Made by a program: the position numbers and the translations under genes. The notes under the pieces are model-generated. The model saw only the letters and a list, made by a program, of their open reading frames with translations. It was not told the origin of the DNA and ran no database searches. From Octopus sinensis (taxonomy: Eukaryota): a DNA stretch of 64,000 nt. Shown here piece by piece: positions 39,852 to 64,000 of the stretch. The stretch spans positions 107,322,001-107,386,000 of the forward strand of contig NC_042998.1 in assembly GCF_006345805.1 (NCBI RefSeq), given 5' to 3'. How positions within the stretch are numbered: position 1 is the first letter of the stretch; every line of letters begins with the position of its first letter.

Positions 39852-39890
<39 letters not shown>

Positions 39891-40622: not shown

Positions 40623-40685
<63 letters not shown>

Positions 40686-41926: not shown

Positions 41927-41999
<73 letters not shown>

Positions 42000-42547: not shown

Positions 42548-42578
<31 letters not shown>

Positions 42579-42633
42579 TATATATATACACACACACACA
42601 TATATGTACACATATATATACACACACACACAC

Positions 42634-42674
<41 letters not shown>

Positions 42675-42830
42675 TATATATACACACATATATATATACA
42701 CATATACATATATACACACATATATATATACACATATACATATATACACATATATATACACACATATATATATATATATATATATACACATACATATATA
42801 TATACATGAATATATATATATTTCTATAAT
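41520..42830. repeat. (TA)n/(CA)n low-complexity array
   Basis: Read directly. Confidence 0.9.
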
Positions 42831-44294
42831 ATTTATGTTTTTGAGGCTTGCGTAAGTATACTTATTTATTTGATAATAATTGGAGGAAATGTTTATGCAT
42901 AGACTTCTATTTATATAAAATATTTCATTGTGGCTTTATTAAATATACACATCAGAAAAGAATAATAAATATATGTATTTAAAGAAAAAATTGTTTTTGT
43001 TTATATTAGTTCCTGGGAATTTTCCATAATCACTTTGATTTTGTTAAAATTTAATTTTTCAACAAGTATACGGCCTGATTCTTATGTATGCAGATAGATA
43101 GGATAGAGGGAGAGAGAGAGACAAAGAGAGTGATAGAGAGACCTAATGACACCCTACAGTTGTACTAAAGCAATTCTTTGAATCCCATCATCCATCTTTG
43201 AAGTTTTGTCCTTAGCCTCGAAAATGTTATTGTTTACATCTTACGAATCTAGAAGCATTTCTCATGATTCAGAAATTGTGGCCTCAACTCCCACTGAGTC
43301 TTCATCTTTTTCTACCCAATAGGTTTTTTAACCCAATGTTTACATGCTATTATTTATAGAACTATGAACATAATTTGTACAACTGCTGTTTTTTGAACAA
43401 GGTATAACAAAATACGTCCATATAATATGTCTAAATAAGTACAAGGCTTTAAATGCTGATGGGTGGGGGTAACTGCAAAAATCAACTTTCATTTCATAAC
43501 TGGTACTTATCAATTGAGAAGGACGGAAGACAAAGTTGACCATGGAGATTTGGATTCAGAATGCCAAAGGGCATAATTAAATACCACAAATCAATGTCTG
43601 ATGTTCTACCAATTTTGTCGTCCAGCATTCACAACGATGAATGATGTCCTTTGTGCTCTGATTTCAATCCTAGCAGTTTATTTTTGCTTTCATCCTTCAA
43701 ATGGTTCATAACATAATGTAACAGTTAAGTATTGCAACCAATTCAACTGACTCCCACAGAATGTTTTCCTATGTGCATAAGTCAGAAATAATCATTATAA
43801 TCATAAAATCTTGATACTGATTGTGTCAACAGATTCAGATCTTAAAATTCAGCAACAAGAAGTTTCTGCTCTCAAGAACTTTGTAAAGGATTCAAAAAAT
43901 AGATAATGACAATTTTCTTTGACTCCAGTACTGATTCATGTAATACTAATGCCTTGTGATCATTAGAATATCTATTTTGGTGCTTTGCAGATATTTCTAG
44001 CACAATAAATAGCTTATACTCACTTGTCACAAAATTTGCTCGGGCACTTTTTTTTTCCGTTTCTCACTTTTTTTACTCAAAACTATGTGATTTTACATAC
44101 CTTGCTCTCTGTCTTTCTTTGTGAATGGATAAACAGCCATGTAGTAAAGAAGACGCAGTGACTGTTGCTATATAATACTTTTTACAGGTAAATATTTACA
44201 TTGTTTTTTCAATCTTCAGTTTAGGGTTAAACAGAATGGATGGAATGATATAAAGATTACAGAAACCACAACTTCCTTATTCTATCAGGTACCT

Positions 44295-45175
44295 TGAGAG
44301 AAAAGTTGGACCTAAGAAGCATCAGATGTAGTATGCAAGAGAGACGACTGTGCTAGTATGGCCATGTGGCGAGAATGGATGAGGATAGCTGAGTGAAACA
44401 GTGCCACACCCTAGCGGTTGGTAGACCCAGGAAGACCTGGGATGAAGTAGTGAAGCACGACCTTCAAACATTAAGCCTCACCGAGGCAATGACTAATGAC
44501 CGAAACTTTTGAAAATATGCTGTGCTTGAGAAGGCCCGGCAAGCCAAATAACCTCGTGGCTTATGCCAAGAGTGTAACCAGCCCACTTATGCATACCTTT
44601 CCTTCATTGGACACTAAACTCTACTTGCGAAGACCTGTTGAGGCAAGTGAAATCGAAATCAAATTCGATGACTGGCACCCGTGCTAGTGGAGCGCTAAGA
44701 TCGTTGCTAGAGCGGCTAACTGGCTTCCATGCCAGTGGCACATAAAAAGCACCATTTGAGCATGATCGTTATCAGCGTTGCCTTACTGGCACTTGTGCTG
44801 GTGGCACGTGAAAAAAACATTCAAGTGAGGTCATTGCCAGTGCCATTGGACAGTACTTCTTGATACACCAAACATTTATACAACCAATAACATTTATATT
44901 ACTAGAGCTGCTCCTGTACTGGCGACACGTAAAAAAATACTATTTGATCTTGGCTATTGCCAGTACTGCCTGACTGGCCCTCATGCTGGTGGCACATAAA
45001 AGCACCCACTACACTCTCGGAGTGGTTGGCATTAGGAAGGGCATCCAGCTGTAGAAACTCTGCCAGATCAAGATTGGAGCCTGGTGCAGCCATCCAGTTC
45101 ACCAGTCCTCAGTCAAATCATCCAACCCATGCTAGCATGGAAAGCGGATGTTAAACAATGATAATGATGATGATG
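44295..45175 (+). mobile_element. RTE-clade LINE 3' end, second copy
   Basis: Colinear with 29023-29870 in the opposite orientation: agacctgggatgaagtagtgaagcacgacc, repeated ggcac.taaaaagcacc, aggaagggcatccagctgtagaaac, GAT tail. Confidence 0.85.
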
Positions 45176-46694
45176 TTTGTTTGATTCCATTTGATTAGCA
45201 TATTGCACAAGCAGATAAGACATTGGAAAACTAAGGCCAGAAGTTAAACCACAGTTCCCATAACATACTGTTGATTCAGAATCCAACTAATGGCACAAAC
45301 AGCAACAGCAGATGGGTATCCAGGGTAGCCTAGTCCAGTTAGAGTGTAAGAAGTTAAAAACCGAAGCATGGAGACGGAGTTCTCTGAAGAACTTCTGTTG
45401 CCCATCTTACCTTAAAAATTCTCACTACTAGAAAAATATTCTGCTCACCATAATACTGTTACATAAAAATGTATTTATCAAGCTAATATTTTACACAGTG
45501 ATTTATTGACAGTAGTTGATTTGACACAGTTATCTTTACATCAGGTGAACAGATAACTAATGAGTCACAATGATCTGTTCCTCAGACTAATGGGGTTTAA
45601 TCATCTAATCATTAGACCAGAACCTATGAGAGGCAAGTTCAACTCGTACATTGGTCTGGGGCCTAGAAGCCCCATGACAATCTGAGAGCTACCTGTGGCT
45701 CTGTTTGGCTCTCTCTAAAACAAAGCTTACCTCCAAGTCCATCATGTATGTGTATGAGAGAGAGAGAGAGAGAAATAAAGAAGGTGTGTGTGTGCATGCA
45801 TGCATTGTCTCTAACTGCTTGACGACCTGTGTAGGTTTGCAGTTCAATGAATGAAACAGGCAACAATAATTAAAAAGTAAAAAACCAAATGTAAACTAAA
45901 TTCACTTCTTTGAACCTATTTAAACAATGATCTGTAAGTAATTACATGCATTGTGCAGCAGTGAAACACCATTACATTTAATTCAGAAACATAAAATAAT
46001 ACACTGTGAACAATGTTTGAGTGAATAGCTTGCAAATCTTGAAAAACTTGATCAAAGTTGGAAGGCAGTGACTATGACCTTTTAAGGACGATTCCATGAT
46101 GTGTGAGAAGAGAGGAAGTTATGTTCAGATCAAAGTGGATCAGTTAAAAGCACCAAAGTGCCATGTCATGGTGGTTTTAAGCTGATCAACGGATAATGTC
46201 TAACACCCACAATATTCTCCTTGCTTCCATGTCTACAATAGCAAATTTGACAATTATAGATAATGTTCCAGTTGGCTAATGGAAAAGAAATAAAAGGAGT
46301 GACGGAAAGGAAATTAAAACAGGAAATTCAAAGAAAAATCAATTTTAGATGGATTAATGGACACACCACCTTGAGACATTTAAATTTTCAATTTTAAAAT
46401 GGTTTCTTCATATTCCGTTATTAAAAAGAAAAACAACAGCTCTAGTTTCATTCTACAGCTACAGAAAACTCCACAGATGTAAATATTACAAACGTTAATG
46501 CCAGAAATATAACAGAATCTAATTCTAAGGACCAGTATTTCAGTGATACCTTTGTCTTTATAACAGAACATTGCATCTAATTGCTCATGATTACTACTTC
46601 TTTACTATCCTTATTTTAATTCTCATATCAAAAGTTACAATTATATTGTATTTTACTAAACTACAACAGTGACAATATATTTTTGGATAGTAAA

Positions 46695-48042: not shown

Positions 48043-49090
48043 CAAGGGTAGCCTGAAAAGTTCATTGGCTATGAAGGAGTGATGCTGCAAAAACTTGCAT
48101 GTATTCATTTCAAATCTTCAAATTAGTTTTCTTTTTTGTTTTATTTTGTTTATTTTGCATTGTTTCTTTGTAAGTAAATTGGTATATGACTGTTCAAAGA
48201 CTTCAAAAGTAACTAGAGGCAACTCCTCTTGAAAATGGACAGAATATAGAATCGTGGTGTTATCAAGTACATGCAGGGAAAAGGTTTTGCTCCCGACGAC
48301 ATTCACTGACATGGTTGCTACATTCTGGGATGACACTCCAGTTTTATTATTAACAGTGCAAAAGAGGGCAGCTGAATTTAAGACAGAAAGGTAGTCTTGA
48401 AGATGACCCAAGGTCCTGACGTCCTGCAATTGCCACCGCCAAGAAAAACATTGACCATGTTCAGTGATGGATGAAAGACGACTGATTATAAATCAAATTG
48501 CAAATGATATTAGCATATCCCATTAGATACTTGTGTATATTCTGTGCAATGGACTTAACATAATGATTTCTGCTCAGTGTGCACCACATCATCTGACACC
48601 TGATCAAAAGTACACCAGACTGATCACATCATGAGGAAAATGTGACACTGCTTGAAGCAGAACCAGCAGGTTTCCTTGAATGTTTCTTAACACAAAATGT
48701 GTGTTACATTCATCGCTTTGAGCCAAAGACAGAGACATGGAGCAGAAACACCTTTCCTCACCTGCTCCAAAAAAGGCCAACGTCACTTCATCTGTAGGCA
48801 AGATGACAGCCTGCTTTTGTGGGTACAAAAGGCATTGTGCTTATTGACCATCTTCAAAAGGGAGCAATGGAGAGTAATATGCCAACCTTCTGAGGCAGTT
48901 ATGAAGAGCCATCAAGACCAAACGCTCAAGAAAACTGACAAAATAGGTCGTGTTTCAGTAAAACAATACTCTAACATCCAAGTGCTTGGTTTCAGTGGCT
49001 GCTATGCTTAAATATGGCTTTGAACTAGTTAATCACCCTCCTTATTCTCCTGGTTTGGCCAGATGTGCCTATCATCTATTCCCCCATGAT
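48043..49090 (+). pseudogene. Decayed mariner transposase
   Basis: Frameshifted RGVIKYMQGKG and LEDDPR, fragments of the WVP region, HPPYSPGLA near 49030; TIR-like aagggtagcctgaaaagttc at the left end. Confidence 0.7.
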
Positions 49091-49699
49091 TTTCAGCTTA
49101 TGCATTAGGCATTGCAATGATGTTTTCGGTATGGATAGTTCTAGAGAAGTACGTTGTGTAGGCTTCTTTGGACTATTCACAAATGTCATAGCCACTAACA
49201 TCTCATTTTTTTTTTCAGTCAAAGTTTTAGGGTGTGCAGATTTTGATGTGTGAAAGGCTTCTGGCCATGTTGTGTACACCTGCTCAGCATTTTGAGACTT
49301 CCAATATTGCTTTAATATCCACTTTCTTTGCTCTTGATTTAAATTGTTTGCTATGGCTTACACTTTATAATACCTTTATAATACAATTACAAGCTAAAAA
49401 GGGAGCTTGAAAAAATTAACTAAATTAGCATAGAATAATGAATGATCTCATACTGTTTTATAATTATGATCTTAATATATGAATGCGAAAGAGATAGTTG
49501 AATAACTGTAAACCTACTTTAGGGCCACCCTATAGGTAGCAGCCACTGACAACCTTCCAGAGGAAGAGGAAACGAAATTATGAAATTAAAATATAGAAAA
49601 GATTATTTTCATGAACGCTAACTTCATTCATCATTCTCTATTAAAAAAAAGATAACATGAATCCAGTCTGTGAACAGAGAAGTATTTCACCTTGTCCTA

Positions 49700-50010
49700 T
49701 GTACAAACTCCCTCGTACCTTTAACGAACGTTTAAACAAAAATTACAGAAGGGGGACAACTTTTCATACGTCATACTTTGGCGCGGAAATTGTTTTGGCT
49801 CGACTCGAAGTATTACCAGTGACAAATTAAAAGCATCTAGTTATCTTGCGTCCATTTGCCTGGTGCATTAAATATTAAAGCTTAATAATAATCTCCCAGC
49901 GTTCATTATAGTAATGCAAGCATTACTTAGCGACTTTCAAGGGACACCAGATAAGCCACCTATACTAGGATGTATCTCAGTCAACCATAGCTCCCTACTT
50001 GAATAGGCCG
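49700..50010 (+). mobile_element. CR1/L2-like LINE 3' fragment
   Basis: GTPDKPPILGCISVNHSSLLE* resembles the PDxP...NSLLxW C-terminus of this LINE group. Confidence 0.55.
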
Positions 50011-50119
50011 ATACCACAAAACAATGCTATTAAGTTACCTGGGCCAATCTGGTTGAAACATACTTAAGCTACATACAGGAAATAAAATTAAACTACGAAT
50101 TAAAAGCAGCTCTAGTAGT

Positions 50120-51257
50120 ATAAATGTTTGGTGTATCAAGAAGTACTGTCTCAAAAGAAATGACAGCTTTGAGAAAGAGGGAAAAACCTCCTCATCGAAA
50201 CAAAACTCTGGAAGAAAACCAAAACTTTCAGATAGGGACCAACGGACTCTTGCACAAATTGTTAGAAAGGACTCAGCTATAGTTGACTGAGATACATCCT
50301 AGTATAGGTGGCTTATCTGGTGTCCCTTGAAAGTTGCTAGGTTTGTTTTGAAGGTGATGGAGTCTTTTTCTTCATTTTGACAATGTTAAATAGCACGGCC
50401 TGCTGAAAAGAATTTTTGTTGAGGCTGAATTTTGTAGGTGACGTGTGGTATGTGACCCTAGTCTTTGATGAATTTTAAATCTGATGCTAAGGCCGTCCGC
50501 ACAATGCTGGTGATACAAAAAGTACAGCTCCCAAAATTACTGCAGAGCTTAATGACCATCTCAAGAACCCAACTTCCACAAAAACTGTTCACTGGGTGCT
50601 GCACAAAGCCAGTTTTCATGGGAGGGCTGCAATCAGAGAAAACCACTACTTTCAAAAACAAATGTTGCAACATGTTTACAGTGGAGTAAAAACCTGTAGA
50701 ATTGGTCCCAAGAGCAGTGGAAGAATGTTATTTTCTCTGACAAGTCATCCTTTACTGTATTTCCATCCACTGGCCAAGTATACATGTGGAGACAGCCAAA
50801 AGAAGCATTTGACTTTGTGCTACATCATGGAAATCCGCTAGCCCAATGGTTTCCCTTCATGGCAGAATTAATAGTCAAGACTATTTAAGCATTTTATCTG
50901 ACCAAATTCATCCTATGGTTGTGGGACTGTTTCTGGAGGGAAATGCAATTTTTCAGGATAATAATGCACCAATTCACACAGCTATAGTTGTTACTGAATG
51001 GTACAAGGAACATCCTAGTTATGTTGAACATCTTATCTAGTCGCCACAGTCCCCAGATCTCAATATTACTACAAGAAATGGAGACTGTTTTAGCTGAAGA
51101 ATGGATAAAAATTCTTTTGGAAACAATTCAAACTTTGTACAAGTCCAAACCTCATAGAATTCAAGCTGTAATTACTGCCAAAGGTGGTCCTACCCAGATT
51201 AAAATAAATTAGCTTGAAATTTTAAGGTGTTTCCATTATTTTGTTTAACCCCTGTAT
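50120..51257 (+). pseudogene. Decayed Tc1-family transposon interrupted by an antisense LINE fragment (50272-50465)
   Basis: FGVSRSTVSK, SGRKPKLSDRDQR, KITAELNDHL, FSDKSS, FQDNNAPIHTA, SPQSPDLNI; right TIR ending ...aacccctg-TA. Confidence 0.8.
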
Positions 51258-51499: not shown

Positions 51500-52075
51500 T
51501 TAACATCCCTTGTCCATGCTGGAATAGGTTGGAGTTTGACAATAGTTGGTAAGCTGCACCAGATGGATGCCCTTCCAAACACCAACCACTCCAAAATGTA
51601 ATGGGTCTTTTTACGTACCAGCAGCACAGATGCCATTTGCATGACATCAGTATCTGCCATGACTGCAATTTCGCCTGGCTAGATAGTCATCTTCTTGATC
51701 ACAATATAATGCCAAAGGTCTCAGTCATTGCCTCTTGCAAGACCCAACGCTGGAAAGGAACTCGGCCACTTTGCCTCTGTGAGGCCAAACACTCAAAAAG
51801 TCTTCAGCCACTTCGCTTCTAGGAGGCCCAATGCTCCAACAGTGCTTTTTACATGCCACCAGCATGGGTGCCAGTTACACAACTCCAACATCAGCCATAA
51901 CAATTCGAATTGGTTTGCATATTGCCAATAGTCTGTCACTAGTCATTGCTTCTGTGAGGCATACTTCACCACTTTGTCCCATGTCTTGTGGGTCTACCAC
52001 TACCACATGTTTCCTCCATAGCTGTCCACATCCATATGCATCGAATGACCATACCAGCACACTCATCTGATGTCT
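51500..52075 (-). mobile_element. RTE-clade LINE 3' end, degraded third copy
   Basis: ggatgcccttccaaacaccaaccactcc, repeated tttttac(g/a)tgccacc, atgaccataccagc (reverse of RWYGH). Confidence 0.7.
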
Positions 52076-53750: not shown

Positions 53751-54438
53751 GGAATTGTAAGCCACTAGTTCATAAATGCTGGTATATAGGATTTTAAAAA
53801 TGACTGAGCACCAAATATATTACCTAACTGACACATAGGTCAACGTATCTAAGATTTGAAAATCACATCTTGGAGATGGACACCACCACCAGAGAACATC
53901 CATGAGCTTTTCTGTCGCTTTTTAAAGTGCTGTCGGAATTTTCTCAGGGCTGCAATAGATCCTTGGCTAGTAATGTATGCTTTGATAATATAAGCATACG
54001 ACAATACCAACTTCCTATAAAAAAAAAAATTGCAAAATCTTCGATGTGTTGAACTGTGTCCCCAACATCATGGCCCACTCTGAATATACAAAAACAGGCT
54101 TGTCAGTCTTCCAAATCTACTCAAGGCCTTTGTCAGCAGAAAGATGCAGAAGATAATTATCCAAGGTTCCATGTAGTGAGGCAAAACCCAATTGCTTGGG
54201 AAGCAAACACCAGCATTGATAGCAAATTTTGTGATGTATAAAGAATCAAAGTAGGACTCGAAAGAATTATAGATCTTTCAGCACAGTTGAACTGGTTTAC
54301 ACACGAATATTTGAAGTGCAGCTGTCACACTGGAGTTCACAACCAGATGCAACCACTATGTACAAGCTGTGATACGACTATAGTAATAAAAAATTTTACA
54401 TATTCATGGATGAGTATGTGTGTGTGTGTGTGTGTGTG

Positions 54439-54479
<41 letters not shown>

Positions 54480-54537
54480 CACACATACATACATAGGTGT
54501 CATATACAGGCAGTCTGTACTATTTAAAGTTAAATTA

Positions 54538-54592
54538 ACCTTCATAGTGTATCTCTGGTGGAAACCGAACAATTAAGTTCAATACATCATCC
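54538..54592 (-). pseudogene. Truncated U14 snoRNA relic
   Basis: Keeps ...gttcggtttccaccagagat...tatgaaggt but has a damaged C box (GGATGA), a 2-nt deletion in domain A, and no domain B or D box. Confidence 0.75.
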
Positions 54593-55049
54593 ACCAACAT
54601 TACAACAGTGAAATATCATCCCACTCATTTTTTCAAATGGAATGTGATTTTGCCACTAATTGTATTGCAATTTTTTTATTGCTTTATGTCAGCTAACTGG
54701 CAAGGTCTCTATTGGCGTTTCAAAATAACCACACTAAGGCACATGGAAACACAGGGGGGGGAGTAGATTCATTGGAACTTCCATTTCAGTTGTGTGTGCA
54801 TGTATACATGTATTGGTGGAAGCATGGCTGCTACCTATTTATATAGATATCCATCCTCTTTGAGGAAAAATTGCCATAAGCAGATCACAATATTAACCAC
54901 AATGAGAAGTTCCAAAAGATTTATTGTATCTAATCAAGACTACTGATTTATAAACTATAGCCAACACAGGGAGAGTGAAATTGTCCTATAAATGGACCTA
55001 ATTTGTAAATTATTCAGTACAGCAAACTGAAGACCAAGAACTGCACCAA

Positions 55050-55148
55050 AGAGAACTCAGACATCCAAGAAAGGAAGGTGACCTTCATAGAATACATCTC
55101 TGGTGGAAACCGCGAACAAATATGTTCAATACATCATCATTGTTCTCT
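55050..55148 (-). ncRNA. SNORD14: U14 box C/D snoRNA, copy 1
   Basis: AGAGAAC/GTTCTCT terminal stem, C box ATGATGA, domain A TTCGCGGTTTCCACCAGA, domain B CCTTTCTTGGATGT, D box CTGA (vertebrate U14: TTCGCAGTTTCCACCAGA and CCTTCCTTGGATGTCTGA). Confidence 0.93.
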
Positions 55149-55674
55149 GGAACATCAAATGCTAGGTTAAGAGGTCAGAATGACAAAAAAATTAGCTTAT
55201 ACAATATCCTTAATAATTGTGTAAATGTTCTACACATGATTGGGTGTGAGCCATGAAGTACTGGTGTTACATTGAAAGCACCTAGTACAGGAGTTGGCAT
55301 AAGGGCATCCAGCTATAGAAACCAAGCCAAAACAGAAGATGGAACGTAAAGTGCTCCCTGGCCCTGCTCATTTATGTTTAGGCATTTAAGCCATACCAGC
55401 ATGTAAAACGGACACAAAAAGTTGATATGTTGAAATGAAATCATTGAATTTTGACATTAAGTGTCCTCTTTTAAAGTAGGTTCATAGGATGTAATTCAGC
55501 TGTAAAAACAATTTTGATATTTCTTAATGAAGGAGACGATAGTGGATATGAAAACTAAGTTCTAAAAAGCTCGTCATGCCAGAATTAAGCTAATGTATTT
55601 AAAATTGTTTACAGCAATCAAACTACCAGTTAAAAGCGAATGGTCAAATGAGCATAACATCAGACTGCTGCAGG

Positions 55675-55773
55675 AGAGAACTCAGACATCCAAGAAAGGA
55701 AGGTGACCTTCATAGAATACATCTCTGGTGGAAACCGCGAACAAATATGTTCAATACATCATCATTGTTCTCT
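55675..55773 (-). ncRNA. SNORD14: U14 box C/D snoRNA, copy 2
   Basis: Identical to copy 1. Confidence 0.93.
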
Positions 55774-56160
55774 GGAACATCAAAAGCTGGATTAAGGTCA
55801 GAGCTTATGATATATCCTTAATAATTGTGTAAATGTTCTACACATGTATGGGTGTTACATTGAAAGCACCTAGTGCAGGAGTTGGCATTAAGACGGGCAT
55901 CAAATGTTTTATTTTATATTTTCAAATTTATTTTGTTTTTATCTTTCATGTAATTTTAATTTACCTCTACAATGAGCGACAAATTTTGATCAATTTCTTT
56001 TGTAAATCATTATTCTATGTATCTATACATTATTGTATCTGTGTACGTGTGAGTGCTTATATTATCTAGTTGATGGTATTTTGTTTTCTAGTTTTCAAAT
56101 TCCGGTCTTTCATTTTACTTATACCTTCATGGTACACCTGTCCTTTGTGCTTAAATTCAC

Positions 56161-56190
56161 CTGATGAATCCAGTAATGTACACAACTCTT
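56161..56190 (-). other. Candidate 30-nt exon of the snoRNA host transcript (B-type spacer)
   Basis: ttttactatag|aagag...catcag|gtgaat; conserved at 57700-57729. Confidence 0.45.
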
Positions 56191-56584
56191 CTATAGTAAA
56201 ATTTTGTTGTATACCCAATTGAATATTAGCTAATAACCCATTTTCCATAGCAGTGTTTGAACAAAAATTTTAATGACTTTATATCTTGTTGAATGTACCT
56301 GTATCTTCTGTAATTAGAGCTACTTTGTGACAAAAATTATGGTATGGAATTGGTTGAGAATGTTTCGTAAAATCATCTTCCAAAAATCACAATATTTTGA
56401 TAAATAAAAATGTTTTATGAAACCAGACTAAATTCATGATTATGTTAGAAATTAATTGAAACACCTAAGGGGTGTATTTTTGTTAGAAATATATTAACGA
56501 AAGGTTTAACATTGTTTACAGCAATCAAACTGTACCAGTTAAAAGGGAATGAATAGTCAAATGAGCATAACATCAGACTGCTGA

Positions 56585-56683
56585 AGAGAACTCAGACATC
56601 CAAGAAAGGAAGGTGACCTTCATAGAATACATCTCTGGTGGAAACCGCGAACAAATATGTTCAATACATCATCATTGTTCTCT
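56585..56683 (-). ncRNA. SNORD14: U14 box C/D snoRNA, copy 3
   Basis: Identical to copy 1. Confidence 0.93.
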
Positions 56684-57195
56684 GGAACATCAAATGCTAG
56701 GTTAAGAGGTCAGAATGACAAAAAATTAGCTTATCATACAATATCCTTAATAATTGTGTAAAGGTTCTACATATGTATGGGTGTGAGCCATGAAGTACTG
56801 ATGTTATATTGAAAGCACCTAGTACAGGAGTTGGCATAAGAGCATCCAGCTATAGAAACCAAGCCAAAACAGAAGATGGAACGTAAAGTGCTCCCTGGCC
56901 CTGCTCATTTAACCCATGCCAGCATGTAAAACAGACACAAAAAGTTGATATGTTAAAATGGAATCCTTGAATTTTGACATTAAGTGTCCTCTTTTAAAGT
57001 AGATTCATAGGATGTAATTCAGCTGCAAAAACAATTTTGATACTTCTTAATGAATGAGGCGATAATGGATATGAAAACTAAGTTTTAAAAAGCTCGTCAT
57101 GCCAGAATTAAGCTAATGTATTAAAAATTGTTTACAGCAAACTGTCCCAGTTAAAAGTGAATGGTCAAATGAGCATAACATCAGACTGCTGCAGG

Positions 57196-57294
57196 AGAGA
57201 ACTCAGACATCCAAGAAAGGAAGGTGACCTTCATAGAATACATCTCTGGTGGAAACCGCGAACAAATATGTTCAATACATCATCATTGTTCTCT
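57196..57294 (-). ncRNA. SNORD14: U14 box C/D snoRNA, copy 4
   Basis: Identical to copy 1. Confidence 0.93.
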
Positions 57295-57699
57295 GGAACA
57301 TCAAAAGCTGGATTACGGTCAGAATGACAAAAAATTAGTTTATGATATAATATCCTTAATAACTGTAAATGTTCTACACATGTATGGGTGTGAGCCATGA
57401 AGTACTGGTGTTACATTGAAAGCACATAGTGCAGGAGTTGGCATTGAGACGGGCATCAAATGTTACATTTTATATTTTCAAATTTACTTCGTTTTTATCT
57501 TTCATGTAATTTTAATTTACCTCTAAGGTGAGTGACAAATTTTGATTAAATTCTTCTATACCTTATTGTATCTGTGTATCTATGTGAAGAGCTTATATAA
57601 TCTAGTTGATGGTATTTTGTTTTCTAGTTTTCTTCAAATTCCGGTCTTTCATTTTACTTATACCTTCATGGTACACCTGAACGTTGTGCTTAAATTCAC

Positions 57700-57729
57700 C
57701 TGATGAATCCAGTAATGTACACAACTCTT
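57700..57729 (-). other. Candidate 30-nt host exon (second B-type spacer)
   Basis: Same acceptor and donor as 56161-56190. Confidence 0.45.
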
Positions 57730-58124
57730 CTATAGTAAAATTTTGTTGTATACCCAATTGAATATTAGCTAATAATCCATTTCCTATAGCAGTGTTTGAA
57801 CAAAAATTTTAATGACTTTATATCTTGTTGAATGTACCTGTATCTTCTGTAATTAGAGCCACTTTGTGACAAAAATTATGGTATGGAATTGGTTGAGAAT
57901 GTTTCGTAAAATTATCTTCCAAAAATGGCAATATATTGATAAATGAAAATGTTTTATGAAACCAGACTAAATTCATGATTATGTTAGAAATTAGTTGAAA
58001 CACCTAAGCGGTGTATTTTTGTTAGAAATATATTAACGAAAGTTTTAACATTGCTTACAGCAATCAAACTACCAGTTAAAAGGGAATGAATAGTCAAATG
58101 AGCATAACATCAGACTGCTGCAGA

Positions 58125-58223
58125 AGAGAACTCAGACATCCAAGAAAGGAAGGTGACCTTCATAGAATACATCTCTGGTGGAAACCGCGAACAAATATGT
58201 TCAATACATCATCATTGTTCTCT
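58125..58223 (-). ncRNA. SNORD14: U14 box C/D snoRNA, copy 5
   Basis: Identical to copy 1. Confidence 0.93.
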
Positions 58224-58750
58224 GGAACATCAAATGCTAGGTTAAGAGGTCAGAATGACAAAAAATTAGCTTATCATACAATATCCTTAATAATTGTGTA
58301 AATGTTCTACACATGATTGGGTGTGAGCCATGAAGAAGTACTGGTGTTACATTGAAAGCACCTAGTACAGGAGTTGGCATAAGGGCATCCAGCTATAGAA
58401 ACCAAGCCAAAACAGAAGATGGAACGTAAAGTGCTCCCTGGCCCAGCTCATTTATGTTTAGGCATTTAACCCATGCCAGCATGTAAAACGGACACAAAGT
58501 TGATATGTTGAAATGAAATCATTGAATTTTGACATTAAGTGTCCTCTTTTAAAGTAGATTCACAGGATGTAATTCAGCTGTAAAAACAATTTTGATACTT
58601 CTTAATGAAGGAGACGATAGTGGATATGAAAACTAAGTTTTAAAAAGCTTGTCATGCCAGAATTAAGCTAATGTATTAAAAATTGTTTACAGCAAACTGT
58701 ACCAGTTAAAAGCGAATGGTCAAATGAGCATAACATCAGACTGCTGCAGG

Positions 58751-58850
58751 AGAGAACTCAGACATCCAAGAAAGGAAGGTGACCTTCATAGAATACATCT
58801 CTGGTGGAAACCGCGAACAAATTATGTTCAATACATCATCATTGTTCTCT
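58751..58850 (-). ncRNA. SNORD14: U14 box C/D snoRNA, copy 6
   Basis: As copy 1 with a 1-nt insertion between the C box and domain A. Confidence 0.92.
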
Positions 58851-59399
58851 GGAACATCAAAAGCTGAATTACGGTCAGAATGACAAATTAGCTTACGACA
58901 TAATATCCTTAATAATTTGCGTAAACGTTCTACACATGTATGTGTGTCAGCCATGAAGAAGTACTGGTGTTACAGTGAAAGCACTTAGTACAGTGGAGTT
59001 GGCAATAAGACGGGCATCCAGCTACAGAAATGAAGCCAAAACACGATGGAACCCAAAGTTCTTCCTGGACCTGCTCATATATGTTGAGCAGTTTAACCCA
59101 TGCCAGCATGTAAAACAGACACCAAAAGAGGATTTGAAGTTTAGATTTATCTAAACCATGCTAAAATGAAATCACTGAATTTTGACATACTAAATAGGTT
59201 CTTAGTATAGAAGTAATTCAGCTGTAAAACCATTTTGATACTTCTTAATGAATGAGACGGTAATAGTGAATATGAAAACTGTAAGGGTTAAAAAGCTTCT
59301 CATGCCAGAATTAAGCAAGTGTATTTAAAATTGTTTACAGCAGACTGTACCAGTTAAAAGCAAATGGTCAAATGAGCATAACATCAGACTGCTGCAGAA

Positions 59400-59496
59400 G
59401 AGAACTCAGACATCCAAGAAAGGAAGGTGACCATCACAGAATACATCTCTGGTGGAAACCGCGAACAAATATGTTCAATACATCATCATTGTTCTC
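59400..59496 (-). ncRNA. SNORD14: U14 box C/D snoRNA, copy 7 (variant C' box)
   Basis: All boxes and guides intact; internal GTGATGG replaces ATGAAGG; GAGAAC/GTTCTC stem. Confidence 0.93.
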
Positions 59497-59955
59497 AGCA
59501 TGAAAACAGCAACAGATATAGTTACAATGAAAATTACTGGACTATCATAATGAAATATGAAGTGACCAACAATAAGAGCATCATAATAATGAGAAATATC
59601 TAACAGCAACTTCGTTTTTGTGTCTACAGTCGTGATCACTTTATAATTCATGCTCTCACAAAAATGGACAATAATTATGTTAACCCTAGCTCTTATGAGA
59701 GAATCTGGTCAGTTGAGAAACGAAGTAGAAACCACATACATCAAATTCACTTCATTATGCTCACATATATACACTTTTGAAGTAGTAGAATAACTATAGC
59801 ATGCTATGAATGCAACATTATAGCCTAGAGAAAAATAAATGTACACAAAATCAGTCAGATATCTGAAGTAACAAATACAAGATATGTAGTGCTGTTCACA
59901 GTAACTTGTACAAGTCTTTCATATAAAATTTCAAGTATTAAAGCTCAACTTTACA

Positions 59956-60023
59956 CCAATCAGATATATCAAGTTTCCACAGAAGTTTCAGAACAGGTCT
60001 GTGATATTAAATCATCATGTTGG
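59956..60023 (-). ncRNA. SNORD25: U25-type box C/D snoRNA (guide for the 18S G equivalent to human Gm1490 / yeast Gm1428)
   Basis: ccaa-c-ATGATGA...ATCACAGACCTGTT-CTGA (D')...CTGA-ttgg, 68 nt; the 14-nt guide complements conserved 18S AACAGGUCUGUGAU; fifth-nucleotide rule gives AACAGm. Confidence 0.9.
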
Positions 60024-60699
60024 AAAAACCAGTACTAACACAAGCATGAATCTTGAACATCTAGCCAAGTGTACATTATTTGTGTATTTCAATAAATATA
60101 ATGAAGAGTCAATGACACTAAACTAGAAAGCTGTAACTACCCACATGTCAAGGAACATAAACCAACACTTAAACATGAATTACTATTCATAGTATCGTAA
60201 ATAGAAAATACCGAAAAACTCAAGAACATACTTTGTGAAAGATAAATCAGACAATCAAGAAAGGGTCTTTCAACAAATCCATCTAAAGAACATTAGATGA
60301 ATTTAACCTAAATATTACTATAGCATAACTTTTTTTAAAATAATTTTACATGCACTTTGTTAACGTTCATACAGGAGGAATGTATTTCCCGTCTTAAGCA
60401 AAACGTATTGTTTAAAAAATTATACACCAGCTTTCTTAATCATTCGACAAGCTTTCTGTCATTCATAATCCAAATCACTTTTCCTGTCCTACTGTATGAC
60501 AATACCTTTTTTAAATTCTAGTTGGATTCTCTATCAGCAAGCAGAGCACACGCAAGCTGTCTTTATTCAGAGGGTTAAGACATTTAGATATAGATTCTAA
60601 TTCTATTTATATTCCAAAATGAGTTCAAATTGTGTCATTTCAGATTCACTTTAAGTAGCATCTTCATTACAGATCTAAATCTAACTACTGAAAACTTAC

Positions 60700-60733
60700 A
60701 CATTAGAAAAGCTTTCTCAATAGAAGTCTACCT
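60700..60733 (-). other. Candidate non-coding exon of the snoRNA host gene
   Basis: ataatttttgtag|...atgt|gtaagt; 34 nt with stop codons in all three frames. Confidence 0.6.
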
Positions 60734-60758
60734 CTACAAAAATTATCGATTAATAGCA

Positions 60759-60841
60759 TTGAGGTCAGTTACTGTCTAGTGAGCATGGTCTCATCGATGT
60801 TACATCTCATGAAAACCCAGTTAATCTTCATCATTCCTCAA
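60759..60841 (-). ncRNA. Box C/D snoRNA, target unassigned
   Basis: ttgagg/cctcaa terminal stem, C ATGATGA, D' ATGA, gatg-taa-catc hairpin, C' CGATGA, D CTGA; 83 nt. Confidence 0.8.
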
Positions 60842-61142
60842 AATGCAATTTAGCTAAGAATGAAATATTGATATAAACCAGAAGATTAAAATCCTACACT
60901 GGAAGCTTCATTTGGATCAAAATTTACATAAGCCCATCCATCAAACATTTCTGATAAAATCTACTTATGTACCTAAATCTTTGATAAATGATTCAAGACC
61001 TTTATCGGGCAGCATCTTTTGCCTACAAGCACCCAATACTACCATACAACTGTCCTGATATTTTTGATGCTGTATTTAGATTTATTTCTACAGCAATGGG
61101 AAATCCTAATTCATTCAATCTTGCTACAGATCAACTTTTAAA

Positions 61143-61255
61143 TCATGTTTGCATTTCACGAAGTCACACCAACCTTAAATGTCACTGAGTTGCAATCTAC
61201 TCTGCAGGTTTAACCAAATGGATAACAATTTCATATCCAGATTAACAGACATACT
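61143..61255 (-). ncRNA. Candidate box H/ACA snoRNA
   Basis: Hairpin (ttaatc-tggata/tatcca-ggttaa), hinge AGAGTA (ANANNA), second hairpin (ttgca/tgcaa), then ACA plus 3 nt; ends 54 nt before a ctgtag acceptor. Confidence 0.5.
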
Positions 61256-61569
61256 GAAGATTTAAAACTAAAGTGTTTGTGTACAAGTTAACCATTAATC
61301 AAATGGTATTTCACCAGTTATCAATGAGAGACCAGAGCTAAATGTTTTAATCAGAATAGTGATGAAAAAGTAAGAAAACATTTAATTGAAACTAGCATAA
61401 ATAGTTGGGCTTGCATAGCTTTTAATTGATTATATCTGGAAAAAATTGACCAGGAAAACTGTAGGTTGGCAAGAAAGTAACTTCGGTTTTTTTGTGTGAA
61501 ACAAGTCGTTTTCTGGTTTATGTTTAACACCTGGTCCTGATTTTAAACATTCAATACAACTCTTCTTAC

Positions 61570-61596
61570 CCTAATGGTGTTTTTGCATTTTTTATA
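61570..61596 (-). other. Candidate 5' exon of the snoRNA host gene
   Basis: gtgttttacag|tataaa...attagg|gtaaga. Confidence 0.4.
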
Positions 61597-62215
61597 CTGT
61601 AAAACACTCAATACCGCTCTACCTATTCCCATTAGACTTAACTTGCTTATTGGAATCCGAGAGAACTTGTAATTAATCGAAAATATTAAACAAGGCATCA
61701 GATGGTCGGGAGATGCGCTAGAAACAGCAGGTAAATTGCCCTTTTCCTAAGTGAAACCATATTCAACACCGTAATCGTTCGTCAAATCAGAACGTGTTGT
61801 TGACAATAACTTTTATATTAGTTTTTTCAATTCTTGTTTATATCTTGAAACAAAGCAGTAAGAAATGATAGGTAGATAAGCAAAGTTAGAAATCAGTTGT
61901 ATTTATGTCCCTTTGCTTTCTTTTTTTTTTACGAAAGTAAACTGAACGATTTACCATATGAAGGAGTTTCTCTTACCATGATACATGAGATCTTTGTTAA
62001 AATCTTTATCTATTACTCAGACGAAAAATAAATCTAAAAATTATATTTTCAAACCCTTTTCCGTTAGACTCAAAAAAATAATTCCTAAATGTCTCGTCCT
62101 CTCCCACACCCTTGGGAAAAAAATTTCCCCCAAATTTCATTATAATCGGTTCGTTGGCGCAAATTTCACTATAATCGATTGTTCTCATATTCGTTTAATA
62201 CACATTTTACTCTTT

Positions 62216-63241
62216 TTAATCAATTATATATTTTCCATTTCGATCGATGACCTTTTGCCATCTTTCTGGCAACTTCATGATTCCGCACTCATAGAACTTC
62301 TGGTCCTTATCAGCCAAAAACTCAAGCAAGTGCGATTTCAGGTCATCATCATTATTGAAAATATTATCATTCAAAGAATTTTGCAGACTTCGAAATAAAT
62401 GATAATCTGATGGTGCCAGGTCAGGGCTATATGGTGGATGTGACATCACTTCCCAACCAAGCTCTAATAATTTTTCACGAGTTGGCAAAGACATGTGTAG
62501 TCTAGCATTGCCATGGTGGAATATGATTCCTTTACCATTTGCCAATTCTGGCCGTTTTTCTTCGATTGCTTTCTCCAGTTTCACTAGTTGTTGACAGTAA
62601 ACATCTGAATTAATTGTTTGGTTCCTTGGAAGCAGTTCAAAATACACAACACCTTTGTAATCCCACCAAATTGACAGCATGACCTTTTTTTGATTCATTT
62701 CAGCTTTCGATGTGGTTTGTGTTGGTTTATGCTTGGACCATGATCGTTTTGAATTGATGTTATTGTAGACAATCGATTTTACATTACCAGTTATGATTCG
62801 TTTTAAAAAAAGGTCGATTTCATTGCGTTTGAGATGCATATCACAAATATTGATTCGTTGTGTTAAGTGAATCTCTTTCAATTCATGAGGAACCCAAATT
62901 TCGAGTTTCTTAACGAATCCAAGACATTTTAAGTGATTTTCAATTGTTGTATGTGATACATTCAATCTATCTGCAATCTCTCGCACAGTTATATGACAAT
63001 CAGATTCAATTATAGCTTTGATTCGGTCATCATCAACTTCAGTAGGTCGACCAGAACGCTGGTCATCTTTGAGTGAAAAATCTCCAGAACGGAATTTTTT
63101 AAACCATTTCTGACATGTGCGTTCTGTTAAGCAATCAACACCATAAACTTCACATATCTTTTTGTGAGCCTCAGCTGCTTTCACCCCTTTACGGAAATAA
63201 AAAAGCAAAATATGGCGAAAATGTTCGTTTTTGCGTTCCAT
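62216..63241 (-). CDS. Mariner transposase (mellifera-like), full-length 341-aa ORF, two catalytic Asp residues mutated
   Basis: HFRHILLFYFRKG, RSGRP, WVPHEL and YSPDLAPSDY intact; ITGNVKS for ITGDEKW and HHGNARLH for HHDNARPH. Confidence 0.93.
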   Translation of the reverse strand: MERKNEHFRHILLFYFRKGVKAAEAHKKICEVYGVDCLTERTCQKWFKKFRSGDFSLKDDQRSGRPTEVDDDRIKAIIESDCHITVREIADRLNVSHTTIENHLKCLGFVKKLEIWVPHELKEIHLTQRINICDMHLKRNEIDLFLKRIITGNVKSIVYNNINSKRSWSKHKPTQTTSKAEMNQKKVMLSIWWDYKGVVYFELLPRNQTINSDVYCQQLVKLEKAIEEKRPELANGKGIIFHHGNARLHMSLPTREKLLELGWEVMSHPPYSPDLAPSDYHLFRSLQNSLNDNIFNNDDDLKSHLLEFLADKDQKFYECGIMKLPERWQKVIDRNGKYIID

Positions 63242-63374
63242 GTTGAACAGTTGTAAACAAAATTACGCGCAATTTGCTTCTAAAGCAAGTAACGGCTATC
63301 AAATGTCAAAAGGGAAAATCATAACGAAATCAAAGTCATTGAAAAAATATCCTAATTCTATGATGATAATTTGC

Positions 63375-63407
63375 GAAAAACGAAACTACCTTCTTGCCAA
63401 CCCAATA
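63375..63407 (-). mobile_element. Mariner 5' terminal inverted repeat with TA target site
   Basis: Minus strand TA-ttgggttggcaagaaggtagtttcg, mellifera-type TIR, ~165 bp upstream of the ATG. Confidence 0.8.
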
Positions 63408-64000
63408 GTTTTTTTTTTATTTACATTCACCTTTTCTGTATACTCGGTCGTCACCAACCGCTGATATTGTCAATATCTGGAAAATAAAAGAATATTCGTT
63501 TAAGTATAACAGTTTGATGCTTTTATTTACACGACGTACGGGTATAAGAACGACTGTGGCATAGGTTTATACAATACACCAAATACATGGCATACACTAG
63601 TGTATAAACACTTTGCCTAATATAATTTAGCAATTAATATACACAGTCATTCAACATATGAAGACTGTTCTAGCAAAATTGCCGCGTAGGGTAAATTAAA
63701 ACTAAATAAGTTTTTCATAACAAGCAGTTTTAATATCAAGCACGTGAAAAGACTAGCAATCCTTGGGAGATGATAGCCATGTATCAGCATTTGAAAATGT
63801 ATCTAAGTGTTCGACAATTTCCGGAAATTTAATTTTTTTCATGTGCCGATGCCGCCAGAGGATTCATTAGTTGGATACAGCTCCGTTGTATCGGGTGAAT
63901 TGTGTGTGTAACTTTCAAGAAACGCAAGACAATTTTTGGATATATCTACCTCCGTTGTACAACACAGAAGAACGAACTTTAGTTAACACACACATTATAT

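What the first reader, a model, noticed from the sequence alone, without database searches (positions are those of the whole stretch)
54538..61596. Non-coding snoRNA host gene linking U14 and U25, as in Drosophila Uhg2
Seen: all snoRNA-like RNAs are on the minus strand and interleaved with short splice-bounded segments (61570-61596; 60700-60733 with stops in all frames; 57700-57729; 56161-56190). A conserved acceptor (ttttacag or tttgcag|ctgaattac) lies 172-176 nt downstream of four U14 copies. No coherent ORF. Known, from memory: Drosophila Uhg2 hosts two U14 and U25, whereas vertebrates host them in different genes. Inference: an unannotated lncRNA host, with U14-U25 linkage possibly ancestral to protostomes.
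Basis: partly seen in the sequence, partly recalled or inferred. Interest (0 to 1): 0.8.

Follow-up and report, generated by a model that had tools for sequence, protein, structure and literature searches.

The report
Octopus U14 snoRNA array with U25
A 6-kb stretch of octopus DNA carries seven near-identical copies of the ribosome-maturation RNA U14 plus a U25-type guide RNA, all on one strand and with no protein-coding frame; this is an ordinary kind of snoRNA gene cluster, and its proposed spliced non-coding host gene is plausible but not shown by sequence alone.

Summary
The RNA genes are real. The minus strand carries seven U14 copies (55053-59494; five identical), a truncated eighth (54538-54591), one U25/snR56-type guide (59955-60023) and one unassigned C/D-like RNA (60762-60838). 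The U14 copies are 99.3% identical while their flanks are 91-92%, so each copy is under constraint.

The host-gene reading is only partly supported. The four "splice-bounded" segments exist and no ORF is present. Their acceptors score no better than background, and strong donor-like sites are no more frequent than in shuffled sequence. The "conserved acceptor" sits in only one of two spacer types, is no better conserved than the spacer around it, and has no shared donor. A metagenomic U14 array scanned as a positive control shows textbook one-snoRNA-per-intron signals; this array does not.

New support for transcription comes from CpG content. The cluster lies at the edge of a CpG-depleted domain (o/e 0.32) that ends sharply at ~61.6 kb against CpG-normal DNA. 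In octopus this pattern marks bodies of constitutively expressed genes.

Ancestral U14-U25 linkage is untested. None of 23 other U14 loci carries a U25 guide.

The parts
60762..60838 (-). Unassigned box C/D-like RNA ('CD3'), 77 nt. It has AUGAUGA and CUGA boxes and a 6-bp terminal stem. Its target was not identified.
   Evidence: best Rfam hit snoR118, 21.4 bits, not significant; box scan; fold with terminal stem.
59955..60023 (-). U25 / snR56-type box C/D snoRNA. Its D' guide AUCACAGACCUGUU-CUGA is identical to the family consensus, which directs 18S Gm1490 (human numbering).
   Evidence: alignments (snR56 34.9 bits, snoU25 23.3 bits, both below gathering); target equivalence from PMC3511168; fold.
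59402..59494 (-). U14 copy 1. It has two substitutions in the internal loop and a 6-bp terminal stem.
58754..58847 (-). U14 copy 2, with a 1-nt insertion.
58128..58220 (-). U14 copy 3, identical to copies 4-7.
57199..57291 (-). U14 copy 4.
   Evidence: fold with 7-bp terminal stem.
56588..56680 (-). U14 copy 5.
55678..55770 (-). U14 copy 6.
55053..55145 (-). U14 copy 7, the last intact copy. Its 3' flank diverges from the repeat.
54538..54591 (-). Truncated U14 pseudocopy. It aligns to U14 positions 8-65 with two 2-nt deletions. Domain B, box D and the 3' stem are missing.
61570..61596 (-). The donor AGG|gtaaga is one of the three best on this strand, but the acceptor is weak. The segment begins TATAAAAA and lies exactly at the CpG boundary, so it could equally be promoter or first-exon DNA.
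60700..60733 (-). Stops in all three frames. Donor TGT|gtaagt. The weak acceptor lies only 28 nt after CD3.
57700..57729 (-). L-type 30-nt exon-like segment (tactatag|...CATCAG|gtgaat). It lies 398 nt after U14-3 and 408 nt before U14-4.
56161..56190 (-). Second copy of the L-type 30-nt exon-like segment. It lies 397 nt after U14-5 and 390 nt before U14-6.
55499..55508 (-). S-type acceptor-like site ...ttttacag|CTGAATTAC (G of the AG at 55500). Equivalent sites have the G at 57023, 58578 and 59222. They lie 176-180 nt after U14 copies 6, 4, 2 and 1.
   Evidence: no shared donor downstream.
58341..58493 (-). Part of the S-type spacer derived from a dispersed repeat. The repeat also occurs at 29.02-29.18 kb, 44.7-45.3 kb and 51.56-51.63 kb. 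The equivalent piece in spacer S6 is at 55261-55322.
61601..62150 (.). CpG-normal zone (o/e 1.05) abutting the CpG-poor cluster (o/e 0.32 over 54.4-61.6 kb). This is the candidate promoter-proximal region.
   Evidence: octopus methylome, PMC9476566.
62216..63241 (-). Intact 341-aa mariner transposase ORF. The element spans about 62.1-63.4 kb and lies between the cluster and the upstream exon-like segment.
63431..63476 (-). Best-scoring exon-like segment in 54.4-63.9 kb (acceptor 7.3 bits, donor 4.2 bits). It ends 24 nt before the mariner 5' end and may be an upstream host exon.
63741..63746 (.). The only CACGTG E-box in 54.4-64.0 kb, next to a CTTTTC pyrimidine run. About one such site is expected by chance (my own estimate from base composition, not computed in a call), so it is only a lead.
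54920..54925 (-). AATAAA 128 nt downstream of the last intact U14 (a second one lies at 54675-54680). Candidate poly(A) signal, unproven.

Best explanation
This is a box C/D snoRNA gene cluster of Octopus vulgaris. In 5'-to-3' order on the minus strand it holds one unassigned C/D-like RNA, one U25/snR56-type guide (18S Gm1490 equivalent) and a tandem array of seven functional U14 genes ending in a decayed eighth copy. U14 acts in 18S processing through domain A and guides methylation of the 18S Cm462 equivalent through domain B.

The array grew by duplication of a ~1.54-kb unit that already held two U14 genes, separated by a short (S, ~520-555 nt) and a long (L, ~820-835 nt) spacer.

I think the RNAs are most likely made from one non-coding RNA polymerase II transcript. 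It would start in the CpG-normal DNA just upstream (61.6-61.8 kb, or ~63.75 kb with the mariner sitting in an intron). The transcript would be spliced, and the snoRNAs released by snoRNP assembly on the boxes and terminal stems followed by exonucleolytic trimming.

Within the array the only credible exons are the two 30-nt L-type segments.

Shown: the RNA genes, their strand, the constraint on every U14 copy, the repeat anatomy, the absence of an ORF, and the CpG boundary. Inferred: the common transcript, its start, the splicing and the exon layout.
For: - RNA genes: U14 boxes, domain A and domain B match the Rfam consensus in seven copies. The U25 guide is identical to the snR56 and snoU25 consensus. 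All three RNA types fold with terminal stems of 4-7 bp.
- Clustering on one strand is far above chance.
- Constraint: U14 copies are 99.3% identical, against 92.3% for 3' flanks, 90.9% for 5' flanks and 89.5% for S spacers.
- Repeat anatomy: start-to-start spacing of 625/910/611/929/626/648 nt and a ~1.54-kb periodicity.
- No ORF.
- Donor sites: the three best donor-like sites on this strand are 61569, 57699 and 56160. Further donors of 4.0 bits lie in the L spacers. An acceptor of 7.1 bits lies 130 nt after U25, and an exon-like segment at 63476-63431 has a 7.3-bit acceptor and a 4.2-bit donor.
- CpG: o/e is 0.32 over the cluster, with TpG/CpA excess. It is 1.05-1.16 immediately upstream and 0.85 in the TE-rich 1-31 kb.
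- In octopus, methylation marks bodies of constitutively and highly expressed genes and avoids promoters and transposons (PMC9476566).
- Indels of up to 14 nt within 60 nt upstream of otherwise identical U14 copies argue against a spacing-dependent promoter for each copy.
Against: - No transcript evidence of any kind was available.
- Generic splice-site scoring finds no excess of strong donors over shuffles, and it gives poor scores to most proposed acceptors.
- S spacers have no shared donor.
- The U14-to-acceptor distances are 176-180 nt or about 400 nt. The L011 control array shows about 68 nt.
- The CpG-poor domain runs on to ~32 kb. It does not delimit a 7-kb host gene and could belong to another transcription unit.
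- The splice matrix is a generic consensus written from general knowledge, not trained on octopus.
Confidence: 0.55

Rival explanations
1. Unspliced polycistronic precursor. The cluster is transcribed as one RNA and cut between the snoRNAs by an endonuclease, then trimmed, as in plant, yeast and trypanosome snoRNA clusters. No exons are joined.
For: Strong donors show no excess over shuffles. S spacers lack a shared donor and are partly made of a dispersed repeat. There is no regular donor-snoRNA-acceptor pattern of the kind seen in the control array. The 7-bp terminal stems would allow splicing-independent assembly.
Against: In animals this mode is rare outside intronic clusters. Good donors (GGgtaaga, gtaagt, CAGgtgaat) sit at sensible places between the single-copy snoRNAs and in both L spacers.
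Confidence: 0.2
2. Independent genes. Every U14 unit, and U25 and CD3, has its own promoter in the ~190 nt conserved upstream block.
For: About 190 nt upstream and 110 nt downstream of every U14 are shared by both spacer types. A 26-nt tract starting 10 nt after U14 and a 14-nt tract just before it are invariant in six units.
Against: The flank conservation (91-92%) is what recent duplication gives. Indels of 12-14 nt occur at about -40 to -55 and about -150 upstream of identical U14 copies. Part of the upstream block is a dispersed-repeat fragment. U14 is processed, not independently transcribed and capped, in the animals and yeast studied (established knowledge).
Confidence: 0.1
3. Introns or 5'-UTR introns of a protein-coding minus-strand gene whose coding exons lie outside 54.5-61.6 kb, for example further down the 30-kb CpG-poor domain or beyond the window.
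For: The CpG-poor domain extends from 61.6 kb to ~32 kb. The exon-like segment 63476-63431 has one open frame.
Against: No minus-strand ORF with a Pfam domain was found in 31-54 kb other than transposon remnants. The only annotated gene found, the CUB-domain protein P0241, is on the plus strand.
Confidence: 0.1
4. A dead array: retroposed or decaying U14 copies that are not expressed.
For: One truncated copy lies at the array edge. All Rfam scores are below the gathering thresholds.
Against: Seven copies are 98-100% identical inside flanks that are 8-10% diverged. All boxes, both functional domains and the stems are intact. There are no poly(A) tails or target-site duplications. None of the other non-vertebrate U14 loci scanned with Rfam reached the gathering score either.
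Confidence: 0.03

Closest known systems
Drosophila melanogaster Uhg genes (Uhg1-8), in particular Uhg2
   Same: Both are ORF-free, same-strand clusters of box C/D snoRNAs. Uhg2 hosts snoRNA:U14:30Ea (PMC4430873 supplement). The fly U14 domain A (GCGGTTTCCACCAG in the published probe) matches the octopus copies.
   Different: Uhg genes carry one snoRNA per intron in nearly all introns (PMC4430873), and Uhg2 is only ~1.2 kb. Here the array has 7 U14 in 4.4 kb and no regular exon pattern. The octopus C/D-like RNA CD3 does not resemble the other documented Uhg2 guide, Me18S-A1576. U25 in Uhg2 rests on memory only.
Vertebrate non-coding snoRNA host genes (UHG/SNHG1, GAS5) and the protein-coding vertebrate hosts of U14 (established knowledge)
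   Same: In both, guide snoRNAs are released from introns of broadly expressed Pol II genes, and the non-coding hosts have poorly conserved exons.
   Different: Vertebrates keep U14 and U25 in different genes (established knowledge). Their C/D snoRNAs lie about 70-80 nt from the 3' splice site. Here the distances are 28, 92-130, 176-180 or about 400 nt.
Tandem U14 arrays in metagenome-derived eukaryotic contigs L011 (OFHQ01000317.1) and L005 (organisms unknown)
   Same: Both have several U14 genes head to tail on one strand, accompanied by other C/D snoRNAs (SNORD52 in L005 and L011).
   Different: In these contigs every U14 has a CTG|gtaagt donor 45-50 nt upstream and a ctaac branch site plus ttttag acceptor about 68 nt downstream, with ~66-nt exons. 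That is a textbook one-snoRNA-per-intron layout. The octopus array lacks this pattern and has 520-835-nt spacers.
Polycistronic and intronic snoRNA clusters of plants, yeast and trypanosomes (established knowledge)
   Same: Multiple snoRNAs share a precursor, including tandem U14 genes in plants.
   Different: Those spacers are short (tens to about 200 nt). That processing pathway has not been documented in molluscs.

Membership tests
U14 / SNORD14 (RF00016) | Box C near the 5' end and box D near the 3' end, brought together by a terminal stem | tested here: met
   AUGAUGA and CUGA boxes with a 7-bp stem AGAGAAC/GUUCUCU in the copies (6 bp in copy 1).
U14 / SNORD14 (RF00016) | Domain A, the 18S-complementary element needed for 18S processing | tested here: met
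   UUCGCGGUUUCCACC against the consensus UUCGCAGUUUCCACC, 14 of 15 identical. Pairing with octopus 18S could not be checked because no rRNA sequence was available.
U14 / SNORD14 (RF00016) | Domain B methylation guide directly upstream of box D (18S Cm462 in human numbering) | tested here: met
   CUUGGAUGU-CUGA is identical to the consensus next to box D. Target equivalence from PMC3511168.
U14 / SNORD14 (RF00016) | Score at or above the Rfam gathering threshold (64 bits) | tested here: not met
   Score is 50 bits (E about 3e-8). The model's internal hairpin is absent here. None of the U14 loci from other eukaryotes scanned with Rfam reached it either.
U25 / snR56 (clan CL00049; RF01188, RF01298) | D' guide complementary to the 18S AACAGGUCUGUGA region, placed so that the fifth base pair upstream of D' targets the G | tested here: met
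   AUCACAGACCUGUU followed by CUGA is identical to the snoU25 consensus. The fifth-base-pair placement was worked out by hand from the 18S sequence as I recall it, not computed.
U25 / snR56 (clan CL00049; RF01188, RF01298) | Score at or above the Rfam gathering threshold | tested here: not met
   34.9 bits against 54 (snR56) and 23.3 bits against 50 (snoU25).
Non-coding snoRNA host gene (UHG / GAS5 / dUhg type) | Several snoRNAs on one strand and no conserved ORF in the exons | tested here: met
Non-coding snoRNA host gene (UHG / GAS5 / dUhg type) | One snoRNA per intron, separated by short exons with canonical splice sites | tested here: inconclusive
   This is plausible for CD3, U25 and the two L spacers. 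The four S spacers have no shared donor (best 0.3 bits), and the acceptors are weak.
Non-coding snoRNA host gene (UHG / GAS5 / dUhg type) | C/D snoRNA about 70-80 nt upstream of the 3' splice site | tested here: not met
   Distances are 28 nt (CD3), 92 or 130 nt (U25), and 176-180 nt or about 400 nt (U14). The L011 control shows about 68 nt.
Non-coding snoRNA host gene (UHG / GAS5 / dUhg type) | Spliced, polyadenylated, usually 5'TOP transcript from a housekeeping promoter | not testable with these tools
   Only indirect evidence is available: the CpG boundary at 61.6 kb, one CACGTG at 63746, and AATAAA at 54925.
Orthologue of Drosophila Uhg2 | Same snoRNA cargo (U14, U25, Me18S-A1576 and others) in a syntenic non-coding gene across intermediate taxa | not tested
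   U14 in Uhg2 is documented, but U25 in Uhg2 is not documented in any held paper. No mollusc, annelid or arthropod genomes could be searched. None of 23 U14 loci from metagenomes has a U25 guide.

The most novel reading that the evidence does not exclude
The U14-U25 pairing in octopus and in the fly Uhg2 reflects one ancestral protostome (or older) non-coding host locus that has kept its snoRNA cargo for more than 500 million years while its exons turned over. That would make a lncRNA gene traceable across phyla through its introns. A variant of this reading is that the host transcript is about 30 kb long and runs antisense through the 3' end of the CUB-domain gene, as the extent of the CpG-poor domain hints.
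Probability: 0.12. Interest if true: 0.55.

Novelty: new member of a known kind. Interest (0 to 1): 0.3.

Why it matters
If confirmed by RNA data, this would add a cephalopod example to the small set of non-coding snoRNA host genes known outside vertebrates and flies. It would also show a layout in which two or three copies of an essential snoRNA share an intron. The wider question is whether snoRNA co-hosting can be ancestral despite the reported mobility of snoRNAs. That question becomes testable by a simple covariance-model survey of U14 and U25 across spiralian and ecdysozoan genomes. As it stands, the locus is a useful annotation (7 U14, 1 U25-type, 1 orphan candidate) rather than a surprise.

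Tried and rejected
1. Organism identification through transposon proteins. The mariner's best relative is 82% identical and the LINE reverse transcriptase's best is 69%, so neither was informative. The CUB-gene exon then gave Octopus vulgaris.
2. Exact look-up of the mariner protein, hoping to fetch the locus from other assemblies. Nothing is on record.
3. The idea that the invariant 3' flank of U14 is a decayed half-copy of U14. Rejected: the local alignment scores no better than shuffles (433 of 500 shuffles score at least as well).
4. The idea that the junction after the last U14 (GCTGTA|CTGAATAATTTAC) is a footprint of intron removal. Rejected: the missing piece starts AA and ends AG, not GT...AG.
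5. Pairing the mariner terminal inverted repeats to define an empty site. No convincing pair was found.
6. The plus-strand C/D-like candidate at 31214-31300. It has no Rfam support.
7. Rfam hits SNORD87-like at 62020-62098 and snR67-like at 62998-63073. Both are weak (E 0.039 and 5.5). One lies inside the mariner ORF and the other just beyond its 3' end, so I treated them as chance.
8. The mir-297 and mir-466 hits are (TG)n(TA)n microsatellites.
9. Literature confirmation that Uhg2 hosts U25. It was not found in any held paper or supplement.
10. Target assignment for CD3 by inspection against remembered rRNA segments. No convincing match, so it is left unassigned.

Full report
**What is there.** At gathering thresholds Rfam finds nothing in the window. 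An E-value scan of 52-64 kb finds seven minus-strand matches to SNORD14/U14, all full-length to the model at 49-50 bits (E about 3e-8). They lie at 55053-55145, 55678-55770, 56588-56680, 57199-57291, 58128-58220, 58754-58847 and 59402-59494.

- Box C, domain A (UUCGCGGUUUCCACC) and domain B plus box D (CUUGGAUGUCUGA) align to the consensus. The 14-bit shortfall comes from the model's internal hairpin, which these copies lack.
- None of the other non-vertebrate U14 loci I scanned with Rfam reached the gathering score either.
- Five copies are identical. One has a 1-nt insertion and one has two substitutions in the internal loop.
- An eighth copy at 54538-54591 aligns only to U14 positions 8-65, with two deletions. 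It lacks domain B and box D, so it is a pseudocopy at the array edge.
- Upstream on the same strand, 59955-60023 matches snR56 (34.9 bits) and snoU25 (23.3 bits). Its guide AUCACAGACCUGUU-CUGA is identical to the consensus. U25, snR56 and AtsnoR19 guide the equivalent 18S G (PMC3511168).
- 60762-60838 is a well-formed C/D-like RNA whose target I could not assign.
- All three RNA types fold with 4-7-bp terminal stems.
- A simple box-and-stem scan of all 64 kb, both strands, finds these nine candidates, one unsupported plus-strand candidate and one low-complexity hit. The clustering and common strand are not chance.

**Organism.** Transposon proteins were uninformative. The ORF at 37206-37727 matches a CUB-domain 'hypothetical predicted protein' of Octopus vulgaris at 100%. 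tblastn places three of its exons in the window on the plus strand at 92-100% identity: 1488-1652, 28309-28347 and 37185-37373. The gene spans 327 kb of a 215.6-Mb chromosome of GCA_951406725.2.

**Anatomy of the array.** Start-to-start spacings are 625, 910, 611, 929, 626 and 648 nt, and longer repeat families have a period of 1523-1556 nt.

- Alignment of the units shows two spacer types. The S type (~520-555 nt) follows copies 1, 2, 4 and 6. The L type (~820-835 nt) follows copies 3 and 5.
- Both types share about 110 nt downstream of U14 and about 190 nt upstream of the next U14. Their middles are unrelated (46% identity in the forced alignment).
- The array therefore grew by duplication of a two-gene ~1.54-kb unit.
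- Mean pairwise identity is 99.3% for U14, 92.3% for 3' flanks, 90.9% for 5' flanks and 89.5% for S middles. At flank divergence about 8 differences per U14 pair are expected, but 0-2 are seen. Every copy is therefore held by selection and/or gene conversion, which argues strongly that the copies are used.
- About 150 nt of each S spacer derives from a dispersed repeat that has three other copies in the window. Much of the spacer is therefore filler.
- A 26-nt tract starting 10 nt after U14 is invariant in six units. Its meaning is unknown.

**The host-gene claim.** Segment 60700-60733 has stops in all frames, as do the four segments joined together. No minus-strand stop-free run exceeds 77 codons. 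Beyond that, the evidence is thin.

- I scored all GT and AG in 54.4-63.9 kb with a generic metazoan splice-site matrix, written from general knowledge and not trained on octopus.
- The minus strand has 3 donors of at least 5 bits, against 2.6 +/- 1.7 in dinucleotide shuffles. It has 7 acceptors of at least 5 bits against 2.6 +/- 1.7, but five of these are the same ttctctcctgcag|CAG motif abutting the 3' end of U14.
- The 'conserved acceptor' lies 176-180 nt after U14 copies 1, 2, 4 and 6. It exists only in S spacers and is no more conserved than its surroundings.
- No GT shared by the four S spacers downstream of it scores above 0.3 bits. The proposed S-type exon therefore has no 3' end.
- The two L-type segments are copies of one 30-nt exon-like unit. 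It has a good donor and lies about 400 nt from the U14 genes on either side.

**A positive control.** A pattern scan of metagenome contigs for U14 returned 23 loci from unknown eukaryotes, several with tandem U14. The same matrix applied to L011 and L005 finds a 6.6-6.9-bit donor 36-50 nt upstream of five of the six U14 copies in those two contigs. The L011 sequence shows ctaac and ttttag|exon(~66 nt)|gtaagt, with U14 ending about 68 nt before the acceptor. The method therefore detects a classical one-snoRNA-per-intron host when one is present. The octopus array does not show that pattern.

**Independent support for transcription.** CpG observed/expected values across the window are as follows.

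| Region | CpG o/e |
|---|---|
| 1-31 kb (full of transposons) | 0.85 |
| 32-61.6 kb | 0.38 |
| 54.4-61.6 kb (the cluster; TpG/CpA o/e 1.2-1.5) | 0.32 |
| 61.6-62.15 kb | 1.05 |
| 63.4-64.0 kb | 1.16 |

The switch occurs at about 61,600-61,615. [quoted passage not shown] Methylation is concentrated in bodies of constitutively, highly expressed genes and is absent from promoters and transposons (PMC9476566).

- The cluster therefore lies in DNA with the mutational footprint of germ-line methylation, next to a promoter-like unmethylated zone. This is what a housekeeping minus-strand unit starting at about 61.6 kb would leave.
- One caveat is that the CpG-poor domain runs on to ~32 kb, so it does not define the 3' end and may include other units.
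- The plus-strand CUB gene does not explain the domain, because its exons at 1.5 and 28.3 kb lie in CpG-normal DNA.
- Upstream of an intact mariner (ORF 62216-63241) lies the best exon-like segment of the region, 63476-63431 (acceptor 7.3 bits, donor 4.2 bits). The only CACGTG of the region is at 63746. These are leads, not evidence.

**Most likely mechanism.** I favour one non-coding Pol II transcript from the CpG-normal zone. It would be spliced at a few sites (61569, 60699, an acceptor 92-130 nt after U25, and the two L-type mini-exons). Introns in the array would then carry two or three U14 each. The snoRNAs would be protected by snoRNP assembly on long terminal stems and released by trimming. 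I give this 0.55.

The rivals are:
- an unspliced polycistronic precursor (0.2);
- independent promoters per unit (0.1), weakened by 12-14-nt indels at about -40 to -55 and about -150 upstream of identical copies;
- introns of a protein-coding gene with exons elsewhere (0.1), for which I found no minus-strand coding evidence;
- a dead array (0.03), contradicted by the constraint on the copies.

**Comparison with what is known.** Drosophila Uhg genes are ORF-free hosts with one snoRNA in nearly every intron (PMC4430873). The supplement of that paper lists snoRNA:U14:30Ea and Me18S-A1576 under Uhg2, a ~1.2-kb gene. I could not confirm from any held paper that Uhg2 also hosts U25.

None of the 23 other U14 loci has the U25 guide core in its flanks. 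Rfam finds SNORD36, SNORD52, SNORD31 or SNORD12 beside U14 instead. Those flanks are short and the organisms are unknown, so this is only mild evidence. Hoeppner and Poole found snoRNA-host associations unstable over deep time (PMC3511168). Ancestral U14-U25 linkage is therefore possible but unsupported.

**Verdict.** This is a genuine and apparently undescribed cephalopod snoRNA cluster, so it is a new member of a known kind. I found nothing on cephalopod snoRNA hosts in the held literature. The Uhg-like interpretation is plausible in outline, but the exon details are not shown and are partly contradicted. The evolutionary inference is untested.

Noticed in passing
window 1-64000 (boundaries at about 31-32 kb and 61.6 kb): The CpG landscape is bimodal. 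CpG o/e is 0.85 in 1-31 kb, 0.38 in 32-61.6 kb (with TpG/CpA excess) and about 1.1 in 61.6-64 kb. It reads like a ~30-kb germ-line-methylated domain inside or overlapping an intron of the plus-strand CUB gene.
   Followed up: partly
window 62100-63404 (ORF 62216-63241, minus strand): A mariner element with an intact 341-aa transposase ORF. Its closest database relative is only 82% identical. The terminal inverted repeats do not pair convincingly. It lies in CpG-normal DNA between the snoRNA cluster and an upstream exon-like segment.
   Followed up: partly
window 1488-1652, 28309-28347, 37185-37373 (plus strand): Three exons of an Octopus vulgaris CUB-domain, single-pass membrane protein (P0241; gene range 327 kb). 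The ORF continues in frame for about 115 codons beyond the annotated donor at 37374.
   Followed up: partly
window 33677-33889 (plus strand): A stop-free segment encoding an LDL-receptor class A-like cysteine pattern (FQCSNDECVSKSSHCDGINDCG...DEHQC). It may be an unannotated exon of the CUB gene.
   Followed up: no
window 38000-43000: About 5 kb of almost pure TA/TG/CA microsatellite, with GC down to 9-12%. Shorter blocks elsewhere produce spurious mir-297, mir-466 and mir-1277 matches (for example 54417-54495 and 30690-30770).
   Followed up: yes
window 29020-29180, 44700-45300, 51560-51630; 55261-55322 and 58341-58402 inside the array: A dispersed repeat family. A fragment of about 150 nt is built into every S-type spacer of the U14 array.
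   Followed up: partly
window 59369-59394 and the equivalent positions after U14 copies 2-6: The 26-nt tract GCAGTCTGATGTTATGCTCATTTGAC, starting 10 nt after U14, is invariant in six units, while the rest of the flank is 73% invariant. It could be a processing signal or the edge of gene-conversion tracts.
   Followed up: partly
L011 (OFHQ01000317.1), reverse-complement coordinates 7750-8600; L005; L019: Metagenome-derived eukaryotic contigs with tandem U14 genes in a textbook host-gene layout: a gtaagt donor 45-50 nt upstream, an acceptor about 68 nt downstream and ~66-nt exons. SNORD52 lies on the same strand in L005 and L011.
   Followed up: partly
window 6832-7965 (minus), 24332-25255 (plus), 49079-49357 (minus), 50000-51200 (plus): Transposon remnants: a LINE reverse transcriptase with zf-RVT, a MULE-type transposase, a DUF4817-type helix-turn-helix and a Tc1-like transposase. 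Those in 1-31 kb keep normal CpG content, whereas those in 49-51 kb are CpG-depleted.
   Followed up: partly
window 31214-31300 (plus strand): A box C / box D / stem candidate from my simple scan. It has no Rfam similarity at E <= 1.
   Followed up: yes
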